Sequence record: OQ031493.1
Strand: one strand, 5' to 3'
DNA: 64,000 nucleotides
The notes under the pieces were generated by a model. It worked only from the letters and a program-made list of their open reading frames with translations. It was not told the origin of the DNA and did no database searches. Positions 33,700 to 37,601 of this stretch are shown here, in pieces; within the stretch, counting starts at the first letter, position 1, and every line of letters begins with the position of its first letter. A program made the translations under genes and the position numbers.

Positions 33700-35214
33700 A
33701 TGTTTGAGTTATTGTTGTCTTCTGGACTAACAAATACGCCTATATATTCCGATCCTTATCCAGGTCCTAAAACACTGATAGCTGGGACAAGGGAATTAGG
33801 TTTGTATGGTGAAACAACATCTTCAGAATTATTCGGTTATGATGATGCGGCTAAATTAGTTAATATGACATTTGGAACAGTAATCAATGATGGACAACCA
33901 TGGTTAAAGTTCTCTAATAAAAATGTTACTTGTTACATACCGAAGAAACCAGCTCGTAAATCAATACAGAAATCACGGCTTAATAATGCCGGACTTCGTA
34001 ATGGTGACTATGAAGTTAGATTTATGGGGAACATTTATAAATTTGGTTTATTAACAATGGCTGGTGCCACATCAGAATGGCAAAGGTTACTTTATAATGT
34101 TCATGTGTCTAATTTAAATGGTGCTAACTGGCCTTATAAATTTACAGATAATGACTTAGGTATTAACCAAGCGGTCGCTGGTGGTATTAGTACTGATGGC
34201 ACCACTAACTGGGGAAGAGATCCAGGTAGTGATCCAGTTAATGACCAGCTCTATCGTGGCTACTATGCAATTGATATAACTAACTCGTCAAGTAGTGAGA
34301 CTGGCGCCGCAACCCAAGGTTGGCGCCCAGTGGTTTATGCTAGTGGTACATATCCGTTCGTTAAAGATAATGTTATTAAACTTACTGATTTTGAAACTGA
34401 TAATGAAATGGCAGCAGGTGCCCAAATAGGTAACTTAGTCTATTATTATGGCGGTAAGAATAATGCTAATACTTCTCTACGTACACTGAATTTAGTCACG
34501 GGTAAGTTAACAACATTACAACCAACTGGTACACCTATAGCAGTTAAACAATGCTCGGCTGTTGCATTTAATGGTAAAGTATATTTCTATGGTGGTGAAA
34601 GCGCCACAGATGGTGTACTTACTAAAGATATGCAGTGTTATGATCCTGCAACTAACACATGGGAAATAAAATCACCAGGTGCGATAGCTTGCCGGTATGC
34701 ACGTGGAACTAGTCTTAATGGGTTAATCTACATATTAGGTGCAGCTGATACAACTGCAACAAATAATCGCGGATTTACATTAATGTACAATCCAACTACA
34801 GATACATATACCAGTGGTGCAGCATTCAATGATACTGGTACGTATACCCAAGATTATACAGTGAGTGTTTATAATAATAGCGTATGTGTTATTGGCGGTA
34901 CGGTTGGTGCTGGTGTTAATACTGGAATCATATCGTACAATCAAACCAACAATAATTGGTCTAAACCAATAACTACAGGTATACCTCTCGGTGCTGCTAT
35001 TAATATACGTCCATCTGGTGAACTTTATGTAATCGCTGGTGAAAATCAAAATAATGCACCAATTAAGTATTATGAACCACGATTAGCACGATGGATAAAT
35101 TTAGGTAATTTAGAAACTGGTCTAGTAGATGCAGGTTTTGCTAATACGTTTAATAATGATGGCAAGATTTATGTTCTAAACGGTAATCAGAATTTAAAAT
35201 ACCAAATTAGTTAA
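33700..35214 (+). CDS. virion structural/tail-associated protein with Kelch beta-propeller
   Basis: MFELLLS N-terminus and LYGE...WLKF...KKPAR domain of the phiKZ gp83/gp131-type paralogs; six Kelch-like blades (YYYGG, YFYGG, YILGA, CVIGG, YVIAG, YVLNG). Confidence 0.75.
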   Translation: MFELLLSSGLTNTPIYSDPYPGPKTLIAGTRELGLYGETTSSELFGYDDAAKLVNMTFGTVINDGQPWLKFSNKNVTCYIPKKPARKSIQKSRLNNAGLRNGDYEVRFMGNIYKFGLLTMAGATSEWQRLLYNVHVSNLNGANWPYKFTDNDLGINQAVAGGISTDGTTNWGRDPGSDPVNDQLYRGYYAIDITNSSSSETGAATQGWRPVVYASGTYPFVKDNVIKLTDFETDNEMAAGAQIGNLVYYYGGKNNANTSLRTLNLVTGKLTTLQPTGTPIAVKQCSAVAFNGKVYFYGGESATDGVLTKDMQCYDPATNTWEIKSPGAIACRYARGTSLNGLIYILGAADTTATNNRGFTLMYNPTTDTYTSGAAFNDTGTYTQDYTVSVYNNSVCVIGGTVGAGVNTGIISYNQTNNNWSKPITTGIPLGAAINIRPSGELYVIAGENQNNAPIKYYEPRLARWINLGNLETGLVDAGFANTFNNDGKIYVLNGNQNLKYQIS

Positions 35215-35220
35215 CGAAAT

Positions 35221-35252
35221 AAACCCTCCCATTACGGGAGGGTTTTATGACG
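35221..35252. terminator. bidirectional terminator
   Basis: AAACCCTCCC-ATTAC-GGGAGGGTTT between convergent frames. Confidence 0.75.
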
Positions 35253-35316: not shown

Positions 35317-35697
35317 TTAATATCCTTCATTGAGTAGTTCCGCTAGAGCACGTGCCTGTGAAATATCAGTGGAAGCAAAAACATCAGAAAGATAATTATC
35401 ATGATCTTTCGCATTCTGACGCAATTCATCCATTAGATGTTTATTAGATACCGCCCATACTTTCCACAGATTTTTATAATCATCATATTTAGGATTATAT
35501 CCATCTAGTGGTGGTTTTCCTTTACCCGCTTTCCAGTGGTTGGAATATATGCGATATCCTTTACAATCTAACTGCCAAGCTTCCTCAATTGTTCTGCCAT
35601 CAGGAAGCCTTGCGTAAAGAGCCGAGAATCTTTTGTCGCCAACAGATGAGCATTCATATCCTCCTCGGCGCCTCCACTGATATATTACTTTGGGTTC
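35317..35697 (-). CDS. start-less open frame, NADAR-like protein (via -1 frameshift from the DNA polymerase gene or an AUA start)
   Basis: 126 stop-free codons: EPKVIYQWRRRGGYECSSVGDKRFSALYARLPDGRTIEEAWQLDCKGY...LSDVFASTDISQARALAELLNEGY*; first ATG/GTG/TTG is at codon 89. Confidence 0.7.
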   Translation of the reverse strand, partial: EPKVIYQWRRRGGYECSSVGDKRFSALYARLPDGRTIEEAWQLDCKGYRIYSNHWKAGKGKPPLDGYNPKYDDYKNLWKVWAVSNKHLMDELRQNAKDHDNYLSDVFASTDISQARALAELLNEGY

Positions 35698-37601
35698 TTA
35701 TAGGTATTAATAAACTTCTCTAGCAGGGTGTCCATTTTAGGAGCACCCATGATCTTCTGTGTGATTTCAATAGCATTAACCCTACCACCTGTTAGGTTTA
35801 CACCAACTTCACGGCGATGGTGTTCACTAATTCCTTCCATCATTGAGAATTCCATTACACATGTTTCACGTGCAATATTTAGAATCTGACTGACGTTAGG
35901 ATATGTCGATACAATGTCAAGGTCGGCGATATGACAGAAGATTAAGGTTTTATAATTTGGTAGATCTTTAACGCACTGTAACCCATTTGGACCTGCCATG
36001 TAAGATGGCAATGTAACAATCCAGTCGTTATGTCCAATAACATACTGATCTAACTCGTGTACCATCTGATCAGAACTCGAACCAATAACACATGGCTCTG
36101 GTCTATTCAAATACCAGAAATGCATGTCATCACATAGTCGTTTTGGGTTAGAGCTAAAGTTCTTATAATCTGATGCTTTAGAGAATAGACTTATAGAACG
36201 ACCAAGATCATTTACTTGTTCATCAAGTTGTTCTAGTCGAATGGAGTCGATGATGTTATAAAGACCATATTTGATTTTATGCTTGGTTTGCATCTCACGG
36301 TGCCAATCGATACCTCCAAGATGCATCGTTTCCTCAAATGTTAACTTGCCAAACTCCATCATGTATCTAATGGAATCACCATACGTAAAGTTATCATTTA
36401 ATATAAAATCATTTACCCTGACCCATTCATTACTGCCTATATTTTTAATATATTTAGTAATAACACCGCCAGGACGATCCACTAATTGTTTATTAAAACC
36501 TTCAATAAACTCTTCTAGGTCCTTATCATTTTTAATGGTCGTGGATTTATCGATATTTAGTTCTTTTCTAAGAATAGACTCTAACCGATAGTTAGGATCA
36601 CGTCCTTTAGCTAATCGAGTAACTCGATAAGTTGACATAGAATCAATGCATTGAAAACTAGAGGGTGCTGTAATCCAATGCCACTGATCCTCCGGTCCTT
36701 TTGATTTAGTGACCCCAGATGCAGTGGTGGTCATAGGTTCATCAATCTTAAAATGGAAATACCTATAATTCTTAGGTACTGATGGATCAGAAAAAACATC
36801 AGCTGGATTAACACCATAATGTTCTAATGTTTTTAAGATTCTGCCAATGTCGAAGCTAATATTCCAGAATGCGAAGAAATCTGGTTTCCAGATATGTAGT
36901 CGTTTAAAACATTCAATAATAATATCTACTGGTGTTTCAACAACCATTACTTCAATATCTAGACCACGTTCTTTAATTAGACGTGATAGTACTTCTTCTT
37001 TTTGTGCTTGTTCTAATGTCTCTTTTACTGGATCTTCAATATCACTAACCCATCGTTTTAAATAAGCTAGGAAAGCTTTGTTCTTATGTGTAACTGACAT
37101 ACAGATAATCTGGCCATCGTTCTCAGCTTCATAAACGTTGGTTTCGATGTCACCGCCAGCAACAGTGTTTAGAGAGATTAGACCAGGATAACGTTCTTGA
37201 TAATCATGCTTCAGATAACAGGTTGAACTAACATCACTGCCATATAGGTAAGGACTACGCGCTAGTTGACGAAGAGATCTAGCCGAATAGTCACCTAGGA
37301 TTTTACTAATCTTACGTTTCATGTCAATTTGAGTTGACATGTATTTAACTAAGTTACGCTCATATTCGTAATCTTTCTTTTCTTTATGGTTACGCATTCC
37401 TTTTGCGGTAATCCAAAAAGGACGCTGGTAGTTTTCCCACATCCTTAAATTATTTGCAGTTGTACCATCTTCAAAATGAATTCGTTCTTTAACGAAATGT
37501 GCATCTGTAAACTTACCAAATTGATCAGTACAATAAGTAATATGTTTGGCTTCAATACCCTTAATCTTTTTCTTATTTGTAACCTGTTGTTCATTAGACA
37601 T
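35685..37601 (-). CDS. split family-B DNA polymerase, N-terminal subunit (3'-5' exonuclease plus motif A), gp82-like
   Basis: ExoI GDIET, ExoII FWNISFDIGRI, ExoIII YNIIDS, polymerase motif A DLDIVSTYPN; no motif B or C. Confidence 0.85.
   Translation of the reverse strand: MSNEQQVTNKKKIKGIEAKHITYCTDQFGKFTDAHFVKERIHFEDGTTANNLRMWENYQRPFWITAKGMRNHKEKKDYEYERNLVKYMSTQIDMKRKISKILGDYSARSLRQLARSPYLYGSDVSSTCYLKHDYQERYPGLISLNTVAGGDIETNVYEAENDGQIICMSVTHKNKAFLAYLKRWVSDIEDPVKETLEQAQKEEVLSRLIKERGLDIEVMVVETPVDIIIECFKRLHIWKPDFFAFWNISFDIGRILKTLEHYGVNPADVFSDPSVPKNYRYFHFKIDEPMTTTASGVTKSKGPEDQWHWITAPSSFQCIDSMSTYRVTRLAKGRDPNYRLESILRKELNIDKSTTIKNDKDLEEFIEGFNKQLVDRPGGVITKYIKNIGSNEWVRVNDFILNDNFTYGDSIRYMMEFGKLTFEETMHLGGIDWHREMQTKHKIKYGLYNIIDSIRLEQLDEQVNDLGRSISLFSKASDYKNFSSNPKRLCDDMHFWYLNRPEPCVIGSSSDQMVHELDQYVIGHNDWIVTLPSYMAGPNGLQCVKDLPNYKTLIFCHIADLDIVSTYPNVSQILNIARETCVMEFSMMEGISEHHRREVGVNLTGGRVNAIEITQKIMGAPKMDTLLEKFINTYKNPK

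What the first reader, a model, noticed from the sequence alone, without database searches (positions are those of the whole stretch)
35317..35700. Hidden NADAR-like domain behind the DNA polymerase stop, reachable by a -1 frameshift at C-CCA-AAG
Seen: the gap after the polymerase gene (minus strand) holds a 126-codon stop-free frame (35697-35320) with a protein-like sequence but no ATG/GTG/TTG until codon 89, so the ORF track misses it. The polymerase ends AAC CCA AAG TAA, so the last two sense codons form an X-XXY-YYZ heptamer (C CCA AAG, 35694-35688) directly before the stop. A -1 slip gives CCC AAA GTA ATA TAT..., joining 638 aa of polymerase to 123 aa (761 aa in total). Alternative reading: the stop overlaps an ATA (TAATA) exactly where a coupled TAATG start would be, meaning an AUA start or a mutated start. 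Established: A-AAG is the most shift-prone bacterial codon context (dnaX, IS elements); NADAR enzymes (DarG1 type) remove ADP-ribose from guanine in DNA. Inference: SS.GDKRFSALY...TIEEAWQLDCK looks like the NADAR-superfamily FS.FY...E..(Y/W)Q..K core. If so, a fraction of the proofreading subunit could carry an ADP-ribose-removing domain to the replication fork. I know of no description of such a fusion. No clear stimulatory hairpin or upstream SD was found.
Basis: partly seen in the sequence, partly recalled or inferred. Interest (0 to 1): 0.9.

Follow-up and report, generated by a model that had tools for sequence, protein, structure and literature searches.

The report
Frameshift extension of phiKZ DNA polymerase
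In phiKZ-type giant phages a conserved 'slippery' sequence at the end of the DNA polymerase exonuclease-subunit gene very probably lets some ribosomes slip back one base and attach a conserved 123-residue domain of unknown function to the polymerase, an isoform that no paper I could search describes.

Summary
The window is a phiKZ-like Pseudomonas phage. Gene gp82 (DNAP-N, the exonuclease/palm half of the split replicative polymerase) ends AAC CCA AAG TAA. The -1 frame then runs 123 codons with no start codon.

This frame is under strong purifying selection (dN/dS 0.03-0.06), and the junction is unchanged in 47 independent genomes.

Comparative evidence favours a programmed -1 ribosomal frameshift:
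- In all 14 relatives where this domain ('X') lies in the polymerase's -1 frame, an in-phase X_XXA_AAG heptamer sits at X's N-terminal boundary.
- The heptamer is C_CCA_AAG, G_GGA_AAG or A_AAA_AAG. Its first base tracks the next codon, not the amino acid.
- Eleven of the 14 have no nearby start codon.
- Two other lineages encode polymerase and X as one in-frame ORF. One separates them by a single TAG.

The rival 'coupled start' reading fits only phiPA3 (TAATG) and a few GTG cases.

The NADAR assignment is not established. Pfam, PDB and profile-profile tests are negative. Only weak fold and motif resemblance remains, plus a suggestive context: X is often fused to DUF4326 and SLOG domains, and to an RNase H-clamp and a helicase.

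The mechanism is a known kind. This instance appears undescribed.

The parts
35685..37601 (-). Gene for DNAP-N (phiKZ gp82 homologue), 638 aa. It is the N-terminal half of the split family-B replicative DNA polymerase: NTD, 3'-5' exonuclease and palm motif A.
   Evidence: ORF. phrog_3011 'DNA polymerase', E 7.6e-241. 100% identical to OQ031493.1 and ~96% to phiKZ-like genomes. Role of gp82 from 10.64898/2026.09.30.755723.
35688..35694 (-). Slippery heptamer C_CCA_AAG, in phase with the polymerase frame. Proposed site of the tandem -1 slip (CCA->CCC, AAG->AAA).
   Evidence: The same in-phase heptamer occurs in phiKZ, PA7, phiPA3, 201phi2-1, Viktualia, HHBS36_1, Phabio, L015, L017 and L019. G_GGA_AAG occurs in L018. 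A_AAA_AAG occurs in L024, L025, L054, L064/66 and Noxifer. 14 of the 20 in-phase X_XXA_AAG heptamers found in 14,788 codon positions are these junction sites.
35685..35687 (-). TAA stop of the unshifted polymerase, directly 3' of the heptamer. It may act as a pause that favours slippage (inferred).
   Evidence: A 0-frame stop follows the heptamer immediately in all nine other C_CCA_AAG/G_GGA_AAG lineages compared and one codon later in 201phi2-1.
35683..35685 (-). ATA codon in the X frame. It occupies the position of the ATG of phiPA3 gp084 (TAATG) and is a relic of a former coupled start.
   Evidence: Across relatives the equivalent codon is ATG, GTG, ATA, ACA, ACT, GTT, GTA or GTC.
35317..35688 (-). 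Trans-frame segment: 123 codons (VIYQWRRRGGYECSSVGDKRFSA...LLNEGY) plus stop. This is domain X, a member of phrog_9995.
   Evidence: dN/dS 0.03-0.06 within the start-less clade. AF2 model with pLDDT 96 and pTM 0.89.
35317..35433 (-). The only piece of X that gene callers annotate (38 aa; PHIKZ082.1 in phiKZ). It is the C-terminal third of X, not a gene of its own.
   Evidence: phrog_33573 (38 positions) is this fragment.
35221..35245 (-). Terminator-like hairpin (AAACCCTCCCG-TAA-TGGGAGGGTTT followed by a T-rich run) after the stop of X, between convergent genes. The polymerase gene and X lie upstream of it, with no other terminator-like site on their strand between them.

Best explanation
Proposed mechanism: a programmed -1 ribosomal frameshift at C_CCA_AAG, the last two sense codons of the DNAP-N (gp82) gene.
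- Most ribosomes terminate at the adjacent TAA and make the 638-aa, 74-kDa subunit.
- A minority slip back one base (tRNA-Pro CCA->CCC, tRNA-Lys AAG->AAA) and read on through 123 more codons.
- These make a 761-aa, 88.6-kDa isoform, DNAP-N-X.

What X is:
- It is a compact, well-folded alpha+beta module of a large, uncharacterised and mostly phage-borne family.
- In other phages the same module is free-standing, or is fused in frame to DNAP-N, to the RNase H-clamp subunit Rhc, to a Pif1/RecD-type helicase, or to DUF4326 and SLOG domains.
- The frameshift therefore tethers X to the replisome at a fixed low ratio.

Status of each step:
- Shown: the anatomy, the selection on the frame, the conservation and co-variation of the heptamer, and the natural fusions.
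- Inferred: that slippage actually happens, how efficient it is, and what X does.
- My best guess for X is an enzyme or binding module that acts on nucleic acid, or on an ADP-ribose-type adduct, at the fork.
For: 1. The frame is coding and has no start. dN/dS is 0.03-0.06 among ATA-bearing genomes with dS up to 0.19. The junction is unchanged in 47 genomes.

2. In all 14 IMG/VR loci where X is in the -1 frame, an in-phase X_XXA_AAG heptamer lies 1-13 codons before X's conserved N-terminus, wherever the polymerase stop falls (0 to 23 codons later). The background is 6 such heptamers in the rest of 14,788 in-phase codon positions.

3. The heptamer co-varies. The base before CCA is always C although that codon encodes N, P, S, V, A or L. 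In L018 it is G before GGA. The window and phiPA3 are saturated at synonymous sites (dS ~1.9) yet share CCCAAAGTAAT.

4. Eleven of the 14 loci have no ATG/GTG/TTG near X's N-terminus. Phabio and Noxifer are named examples.

5. Natural in-frame fusions exist. P0227 (698 aa) is a polymerase homologue plus X, on a contig next to a phiKZ-type capsid gene. P0147 is the polymerase C-terminal exon plus X, in gp85/gp86 synteny. In L078/L079 the two are in one frame, separated by a single TAG, with no start codon.

6. X is single-copy in these genomes and lies upstream of the terminator-like hairpin, on the polymerase strand.

7. X is also fused to full-length Rhc, another subunit of the same polymerase complex (10.64898/2026.09.30.755723).
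Against: - There is no protein-level evidence. I found no junction peptide or 88-kDa band in any accessible paper or supplement.
- No conserved stimulatory RNA structure or upstream SD-like element was found, so efficiency may be low.
- phiPA3, 201phi2-1/Viktualia and HHBS36_1 do have ATG or GTG at X's N-terminus. Independent initiation occurs, or once occurred, in some lineages.
- In phiKZ RNA-seq the PHIKZ082.1 region has roughly 10-18 times the normalised signal of PHIKZ082 (PMC12571901 supplement). This could mean a separate shorter transcript.
- A D6/Psa21 clade has X in the +1 frame, which a -1 slip cannot reach.
- Recombinant gp82 of 638 aa forms an active polymerase without X.
Confidence: 0.8

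Rival explanations
1. X is an ordinary separate protein. Ribosomes that terminate at the polymerase TAA re-initiate at the overlapping AUA (or another non-canonical codon), or a separate short transcript is translated. On this reading the heptamer is only the conserved Pro-Lys end of the polymerase.
For: - phiPA3 has TAATG at exactly this position. 201phi2-1, Viktualia and D6 have GTG, Psa21 has TTG and HHBS36_1 has GTGA.
- Most family members are free-standing ~125-aa proteins that start 1-3 residues before the Y/F-x-W motif.
- RNA signal over PHIKZ082.1 is higher than over PHIKZ082.
Against: - The codon at the 'start' position is ATA, ACA, ACT, GTT, GTA or GTC in different lineages. Several of these are not even near-cognate.
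- In L054 and L064 the polymerase frame runs 21-23 codons into X, so stop-start coupling is impossible there, yet an A_AAA_AAG heptamer sits at X's boundary.
- The base preceding the heptamer's first codon is constrained at nucleotide level, not amino-acid level.
- In-frame fusions exist.
- No SD precedes the ATA. The only strong SD (GAGGAGGAT) is inside X and serves other frames.
Confidence: 0.12
2. X is a recently inactivated gene (ATG->ATA) that is decaying and is no longer expressed in phiKZ-like phages.
For: No start codon is present. Annotators call only a 38-aa remnant.
Against: - dN/dS is 0.03-0.06, with no stop or indel across 47 genomes that differ by up to dS 0.19.
- The same start-less state persists in several distinct lineages of these jumbo phages.
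Confidence: 0.03
3. The shift happens at the RNA level (polymerase stuttering or editing) or reflects a sequencing or assembly error, not ribosomal slippage.
For: A_AAA_AAG lineages contain a run of six A, which can support some transcriptional slippage (established knowledge from my own memory, not tested here).
Against: - C3A3 and G3A3 runs are too short for known transcriptional slippage.
- The strict phase of the heptamer with the 0 frame is the signature of tandem tRNA slippage.
- 47 independently sequenced genomes agree.
Confidence: 0.03

Closest known systems
Phage lambda gpG/gpGT and the conserved tail-assembly-chaperone frameshift of dsDNA phages (Levin et al. 1993; Xu, Hendrix and Duda 2004; cited from my own knowledge)
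   Same: - A -1 slip on X_XXA_AAG (lambda uses G_GGA_AAG, the same heptamer as L018) near the end of the upstream ORF.
- No strong stimulatory structure is needed.
- It gives a short product and a C-terminally extended product at a fixed low ratio.
- Position and function are conserved across phages while the slippery sequence, and even the shift direction, vary.
   Different: - Here the gene is a subunit of the replicative DNA polymerase, not a virion assembly chaperone.
- The appended part is an independently folding mobile domain that is free-standing in other phages.
- In-frame fusion and single-stop variants also exist.
E. coli dnaX tau/gamma frameshift (A_AAA_AAG)
   Same: A replisome gene recoded by a -1 slip on a Lys-codon heptamer. 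A_AAA_AAG is the very heptamer used by the Noxifer, L024, L025, L054 and L064 lineages.
   Different: - dnaX shifting truncates the protein (gamma) and uses an upstream SD-like element and a downstream hairpin to reach about 50%.
- Here shifting extends the protein, and no stimulators were found.
Phage T7 gene 10A/10B and Bacillus subtilis cdd (CGA_AAG) C-terminal extension frameshifts (from my own knowledge)
   Same: A -1 slip close to the stop codon makes a minor, longer isoform.
   Different: Those extensions are short tails without a recognisable autonomous domain.
NADAR (YbiA/DUF1768, PF08719) ADP-ribosyl-guanine hydrolases, including DarT1-associated antitoxins and phage orphan antitoxin-like enzymes that neutralise DarTG1 (PMC11543638, PMC11825919)
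   Same: - A small alpha+beta domain with a collinear motif resemblance: FS(A/N)(L/F), DG(R/K)T, E..(Y/W/F)Q...K.
- Best twilight fold hits are NADARs, TM 0.44-0.55.
- The fusion partners are the same as reported for NADAR and Macro domains, namely DUF4326 and SLOG (PMC9503650, PMC7824862).
   Different: - No statistically significant sequence, profile or PDB-fold match.
- X is about 40 residues shorter and lacks the D..WG.G motif.
- The Glu-Lys spacing is 8, not 7.
- No activity data exist.

Membership tests
Programmed -1 ribosomal frameshift site (tandem-slippage type) | An X_XXY_YYZ heptamer in phase with the upstream (0) frame | tested here: met
   C_CCA_AAG at 35694-35688, in phase with the polymerase frame.
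Programmed -1 ribosomal frameshift site (tandem-slippage type) | The -1 frame is open from the heptamer and encodes a selected protein that has no initiation codon of its own | tested here: met
   123 open codons, with the first ATG at codon 89 of the open frame. dN/dS 0.03-0.06. phrog_9995 match at E 4e-55.
Programmed -1 ribosomal frameshift site (tandem-slippage type) | The heptamer is conserved in relatives beyond what the protein sequence requires, with shifty variants substituting for one another | tested here: met
   14 of 14 -1-frame loci carry C_CCA_AAG, G_GGA_AAG or A_AAA_AAG. The preceding wobble base co-varies with the heptamer. Background is 6 such heptamers in the rest of 14,788 codon positions.
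Programmed -1 ribosomal frameshift site (tandem-slippage type) | A stimulatory element (3' hairpin or pseudoknot, or a 5' SD-like sequence). Common but not obligatory. | tested here: not met
   z -0.06 for the window. z-scores are inconsistent across 12 relatives. RNAalifold finds no consensus structure and no covariation. Only the adjacent 0-frame stop is conserved.
Programmed -1 ribosomal frameshift site (tandem-slippage type) | A trans-frame protein is detected, with measurable shift efficiency | not testable with these tools
   No proteomic record of X or of a junction peptide was found in accessible papers or supplements.
NADAR superfamily (PF08719 / YbiA-like) | A significant match to the family model or profile | tested here: not met
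   No Pfam hit at E<10 for X or for 41 homologues. hhalign against YbiA and broader NADAR profiles gave probability 0.1-0.34% and E 0.18-0.42.
NADAR superfamily (PF08719 / YbiA-like) | The YbiA-like fold: a helical core flanked by two small beta-sheets | tested here: inconclusive
   The AF2 model is confident (pLDDT 96). It has no PDB match (best E 1.5). Against viral models, seven NADAR/YbiA entries appear at TM 0.29-0.55 but with E 1.7-9.4.
NADAR superfamily (PF08719 / YbiA-like) | The conserved active-site Glu and Lys on one helix (E43/K50 in P. nicotianae NADAR) plus a third acidic residue (E125, or Asp in the BC4488 clade) | tested here: inconclusive
   X has invariant E35, Q39, K43 and D102, which line up in the non-significant hhalign alignment. 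The E-K spacing is 8, not 7. Residue roles are from PMC11543638.
NADAR superfamily (PF08719 / YbiA-like) | N-glycosidase or ADP-ribosyl-base hydrolase activity | not testable with these tools
   This needs a biochemical assay.
phrog_9995 / 'X' family (uncharacterised, no Pfam model) | A full-length match to the family profile, with the invariant YE.S..GD.RFSA ... DGR..E...Q.D.K ... KGKP ... L.D ... QA.AL residues | tested here: met
   E 4.2e-55 over residues 3-123. 691 homologues. 823 cluster representatives at 50% identity. Invariant columns are listed.
Translationally coupled downstream gene (TAATG type) | A canonical start codon that overlaps or adjoins the upstream stop | tested here: not met
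   The window and 46 other phiKZ-like genomes read TAATA. The feature is met in phiPA3.

The most novel reading that the evidence does not exclude
A fixed fraction of the phiKZ replicative polymerase carries, through programmed frameshifting, a previously unrecognised enzyme domain. This domain would be a very divergent NADAR-like or otherwise new fold. It would remove base adducts such as the ADP-ribose placed on DNA by DarT-type defence toxins, or process related nucleotide adducts, directly at the replication fork. That would be a replisome-tethered counter-defence or repair activity. Other phages would attach the same module to the RNase H-clamp subunit or to a helicase for the same purpose.
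Probability: 0.2. Interest if true: 0.9.

Novelty: new member of a known kind. Interest (0 to 1): 0.8.

Why it matters
phiKZ is the model nucleus-forming jumbo phage. Its split polymerase (gp82 + gp50 + Rhc) was reconstituted and solved only in late 2026, using the 638-aa gp82 (10.64898/2026.09.30.755723).

If the frameshift is real, the native replisome contains a second, longer DNAP-N isoform that current structures, knock-downs and annotations miss. It carries a highly conserved domain of unknown function.

The finding also does four other things:
- It gives a clean natural series: -1 slip on three different heptamers, in-frame fusion, a single-stop variant and a possible +1/-2 variant. This is comparable to the classic tail-chaperone frameshift.
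- It assigns a cellular address (the replication fork) to a family with at least 823 sequence clusters at 50% identity, which so far has no Pfam model and no known function.
- It links that family to the DUF4326/SLOG network predicted to handle NAD/ADP-ribose derivatives.
- It corrects the annotation of PHIKZ082.1 and its counterparts in dozens of genomes.

Tried and rejected
- **Assembly error or missing base.** The one-base length difference from most relatives lies in the A-run just after X's TAA stop, in the downstream spacer, not at the junction. The junction is identical in 47 genomes.
- **Start at the strong SD inside X (GAGGAGGAT-ATG-A-ATG).** Both ATGs are in other frames. The 29-codon ORF annotated in KEN19/KEN49 takes non-synonymous hits where frame X takes synonymous ones.
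- **Stimulatory RNA structure.** Single-sequence folds suggested a long-range helix starting 6-8 nt after the heptamer in some phages. The registers differ between phages, and RNAalifold finds no consensus structure or covariation.
- **NADAR by sequence.** Negative in Pfam, NCBIfam, a PDB profile search and hhalign with two NADAR profiles.
- **Xanthomonas phage RTH11 as an X-Rhc fusion.** The tblastn hit extended into an unrelated upstream lipoprotein-like gene, so this was rejected. The metagenomic X-Rhc fusions P0154 and P0167 stand.
- **X docks on the Pseudomonas-specific 'little finger' insertion of gp82.** P0227 has X fused in frame but lacks that insertion.
- **Published transcription start sites or proteomics for this locus.** Nothing usable was found in accessible text or supplements.
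- **The 2,000-4,000-aa proteins that contain X.** None of the four scanned gave any Pfam hit.
Full report
**Identity of the window and check of the observation**

The region is 100% identical to Pseudomonas phage MRostami-2023c (OQ031493.1). It is about 96% identical to some 46 other phiKZ-like genomes, including phiKZ itself.

- On the minus strand, ORF 35685..37601 encodes 638 aa and ends AAC CCA AAG TAA.
- The frame one base back is open for 126 sense codons, from 35697 to the TAA at 35319-35317.
- Its first canonical start is the ATG at 35433. Gene callers therefore annotate only a 38-aa stub, called PHIKZ082.1 in phiKZ.
- The heptamer C_CCA_AAG occupies 35694-35688, in phase with the polymerase frame.
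- A -1 slip would give 761 aa and 88.6 kDa, against 74.2 kDa for the unshifted product.

**The hidden frame is a real, selected coding sequence**

- It matches phage family phrog_9995 over residues 3-123 at E 4e-55.
- It matches 691 proteins in the large protein collection and 823 cluster representatives at 50% identity.
- Among phiKZ-like genomes that all lack a start codon, 10-15 nucleotide differences give only 1-3 amino-acid changes in this frame and 9-15 in the other two. dN/dS is 0.03-0.06 at dS up to 0.19.
- The 40-nt junction is present in 47 phage records, 43 of them at >=99% identity.

Assembly error and pseudogene are therefore excluded.

**What the upstream gene is**

PHROGs calls it a DNA polymerase. 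A 2026 preprint shows that phiKZ gp82 is DNAP-N. It carries the N-terminal domain, the 3'-5' exonuclease and palm motif A (D562) of a split family-B polymerase. Its residues 589-638 form part of a 'palm insertion' domain. gp50 is DNAP-C, and gp155 (Rhc, an RNase H-clamp) is a third subunit. The work used the 638-aa protein and mentions no extension or frameshift (10.64898/2026.09.30.755723).

**How the hidden frame is reached: comparative evidence**

Free-standing family members begin M-x-(Y/F)-x-W, 1-3 residues before the conserved core.

Relatives that do have a start codon:
- phiPA3 reads CCC CCA AAG TAATG TAT CGG TGG. Its ATG sits exactly where the window has ATA.
- 201phi2-1 and Viktualia use GTG, 12 nt after the polymerase stop. 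HHBS36_1 has GTGA.

Twenty-four IMG/VR loci have the polymerase directly upstream of X. They fall into three classes.

*Class (i): X in the -1 frame (14 loci).* These are spread over about eight distinct branches of a poorly resolved tree built on the last ~110 polymerase residues.
- Every one has an in-phase X_XXA_AAG heptamer placed 1-13 codons before X's N-terminal motif.
- The heptamer is C_CCA_AAG in PA7/phiKZ, phiPA3, L015, 201phi2-1, L017, L019 and Phabio. HHBS36_1 and Viktualia, fetched from GenBank, have it too.
- It is G_GGA_AAG in L018.
- It is A_AAA_AAG in L024, L025, Noxifer, L054 and L064/66.
- The heptamer keeps its place at X's boundary while the polymerase stop wanders from 0 to 23 codons downstream.
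- Eleven of the 14 have no ATG/GTG/TTG near X's N-terminus. The codon at the 'start' position is ATA, ACA, ACT, GTT, GTA or GTC.
- The base before CCA is always C, although that codon encodes N, P, S, V, A or L. It is G before GGA. This is nucleotide-level co-variation of exactly the kind a tandem-slippage site requires.
- Across 14,788 in-phase codon positions of the 24 polymerase ORFs there are 20 X_XXA_AAG heptamers. Fourteen of them are these junction sites.

*Class (ii): X in the +1 frame (the D6/Psa21 clade, 8 IMG/VR loci).*
- All share an invariant GAA AAG AAG.
- The 'start' codon is GTG, TTG, CTG, ACG or CGG in different members.
- Some probably initiate on their own. L023 and L027 have no canonical start nearby.
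- A -2 slip of tRNA-Lys (AAG to AAA) is conceivable, but I could not test it. This class remains unresolved.

*Class (iii): L078/L079.* The polymerase, here interrupted by an intron-like insert, and X share one frame. They are separated by a single TAG, and there is no start codon.

**Natural in-frame fusions**

The representative search returned two further cases.
- P0227 (698 aa) has residues 29-531 homologous to gp82 (30% and 23% identity in two segments) and residues 561-677 forming X. It lies next to a phiKZ-type major capsid gene.
- P0147 (236 aa) is the last ~95 residues of the polymerase followed in frame by X. It lies in gp85/gp86 synteny.

A covalent DNAP-N-X protein is thus the normal gene product in some lineages. 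This is the strongest argument that the start-less lineages make the same protein by recoding.

**Stimulators**

I found none.
- The window's downstream 100 nt fold no better than shuffled sequence (z -0.06).
- Twelve relatives give inconsistent z-scores.
- An 11-sequence alignment has no consensus structure and no covariation.
- The only conserved neighbour is the 0-frame stop, directly after the heptamer in the other C_CCA_AAG and G_GGA_AAG lineages and one codon later in 201phi2-1.

From my own knowledge, lambda G/GT shifts a few percent on G_GGA_AAG without stimulators. I expect a similar low, fixed ratio here.

**What X is**

- AlphaFold with 41 homologues gives a confident model (pLDDT 96, pTM 0.89). 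It has a small N-terminal hairpin, a helix carrying E35..Q39..K43, two long helices, a short strand at L-S-D102 and a C-terminal helix.
- Foldseek finds nothing in the PDB (best E 1.5, TM <0.25).
- Against viral models it finds four true homologues. After those comes a twilight tail (E 0.4-10) enriched in NADAR/YbiA entries (seven, TM 0.29-0.55) and DUF4326 entries (six, TM 0.33-0.43).
- Sequence tests for NADAR are negative. There is no Pfam or NCBIfam hit and no PDB profile hit.
- hhalign of a 100-sequence X profile against YbiA-type and broader viral NADAR profiles gives probability 0.1-0.34% and E 0.18-0.42.
- The non-significant alignment is nevertheless collinear: FSAL~FSNF, DGRT~DGKT, E..WQ~EHYFQ, GKGKPPL~GRDRKKPL.
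- The catalytic Glu/Lys helix of NADARs (PMC11543638) has a counterpart in X, though with one extra residue between E and K.

I therefore treat NADAR membership as untested-to-unsupported, and NADAR-like function as a live hypothesis.

**Context of X elsewhere**

X is a mobile module. Among 108 representative proteins of up to ~900 aa, the fusion partners are:
- DUF4326 in 17
- SLOG (YAcAr or cpYpsA) in 6
- DUF488-N3a in 2
- RNase H in 2
- an AlkB-type dioxygenase in 1
- guanylate kinase in 1

A longer protein of 1,110 aa, P0184, carries a Pif1/RecD-type helicase. X also sits inside proteins of 2,000-6,000 aa.

The two RNase H fusions align with the whole of phiKZ-type Rhc, clamp domain included (E 6e-16). 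They are genuine ORFs on phage contigs. X is therefore attached to two different subunits of the same polymerase complex in different phages.

Published analyses describe DUF4326 as a rhodanese-phosphatase clade. [quoted passage not shown] X has the same partners that those analyses report for Macro and NADAR domains. This is contextual, not direct, support for an ADP-ribose or nucleotide-adduct role.

In N4-like Achromobacter phages X lies among early genes. In phage PAU it lies among nucleotide-metabolism genes.

**Points that do not fit neatly**

- In a published phiKZ RNA-seq table, PHIKZ082.1 has about 15,000 normalised counts against 830-1,500 for PHIKZ082 (PMC12571901 supplement). This could be a stable 3' fragment ending at the terminator-like hairpin at 35245-35221, a length artefact for a 117-nt feature, or an internal promoter. 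I could not obtain transcription start data for this locus.
- Lineages with ATG or GTG may make both free X and the fusion.

**Novelty**

I found no paper that combines Chimalliviridae with frameshifting. None describes a frameshift in the phiKZ polymerase. The two 2026 preprints on the polymerase complex do not mention it.

The mechanism belongs to a well-known kind (dnaX, lambda G/GT, T7 10A/10B). The instance, a recoded extension of a replicative polymerase subunit by an uncharacterised conserved domain, appears to be new.

**Verdict**

- The frameshift interpretation is well supported by comparative genomics (confidence about 0.8) and awaits protein evidence.
- The NADAR label is not established.

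Noticed in passing
L005 (phiPA3) ~27-370; L078/L079 ~1730-2160; L095 3996-4003: The polymerase gene is interrupted at palm motif A (...HIADLD | IVSTYP...). In phiPA3 and in L078/79 the interruption is a ~340-430-nt stop-rich insert that looks like a self-splicing intron. In L095 the gene is split into two adjacent ORFs (TGATTATG) at the same spot. The window's gene is uninterrupted.
   Followed up: partly
window 35568-35657 (-): A 29-codon ORF starts at an ATG just behind a strong SD-like GAGGAGGAT, inside X but in another frame. It is annotated as a CDS in KEN19 and KEN49. Substitutions that are synonymous in X are Ala->Val here, so it is probably not a gene. The GGAGGA encodes X's conserved Gly-Gly.
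   Followed up: partly
phiKZ NC_004629 80128-80244 (= window 35317-35433): In the published phiKZ RNA-seq tables (PMC12571901, supplement file 7) the PHIKZ082.1 feature has roughly 10-18 times the normalised signal of PHIKZ082. It could be a stable 3' fragment, a normalisation artefact or an internal promoter. This is unexplained.
   Followed up: partly
L010, L011, L023, L027, L030, L033-L036, L039 (D6/Psa21 clade), around locus positions 2485-2500: X lies in the +1 frame of the polymerase. The sequence GAA AAG AAG is invariant, the 'start' codon varies (GTG, TTG, CTG, ACG, CGG), and the polymerase reads 9 codons into X. This may be a -2/+1 recoding site or a mix of weak starts.
   Followed up: partly
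L078/L079 2498-2500: The polymerase and X share one frame and are separated by a single TAG, with no start codon. This points to stop-codon readthrough or suppression in that lineage.
   Followed up: partly
L030, L033-L036 at ~687-693 (about 608 codons before the polymerase stop): A second in-phase shifty heptamer, T_TTA_AAG, is conserved near the 5' end of the polymerase gene in the D6-like clade. Its significance is unknown.
   Followed up: no
P0134, P0149, P0157, P0159 and about 30 other proteins of 2,000-6,000 aa: Very large proteins each contain one X module. None of the four scanned (P0134, P0149, P0157, P0159) has any Pfam hit at E<0.001. Their origin and nature were not examined.
   Followed up: no
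L100 6001-7812 (P0154); L101 3951-5738 (P0167): Phage contigs encode X fused to the N-terminus of a full-length RNase H-clamp (Rhc) homologue. Rhc is the third subunit of the chimallivirus polymerase complex.
   Followed up: yes
window 35221-35245: A perfect 11-bp GC-rich hairpin lies between the convergent X and gp83-like (kelch-like virion protein, 33700-35214 +) genes. It has the form of a bidirectional terminator.
   Followed up: partly
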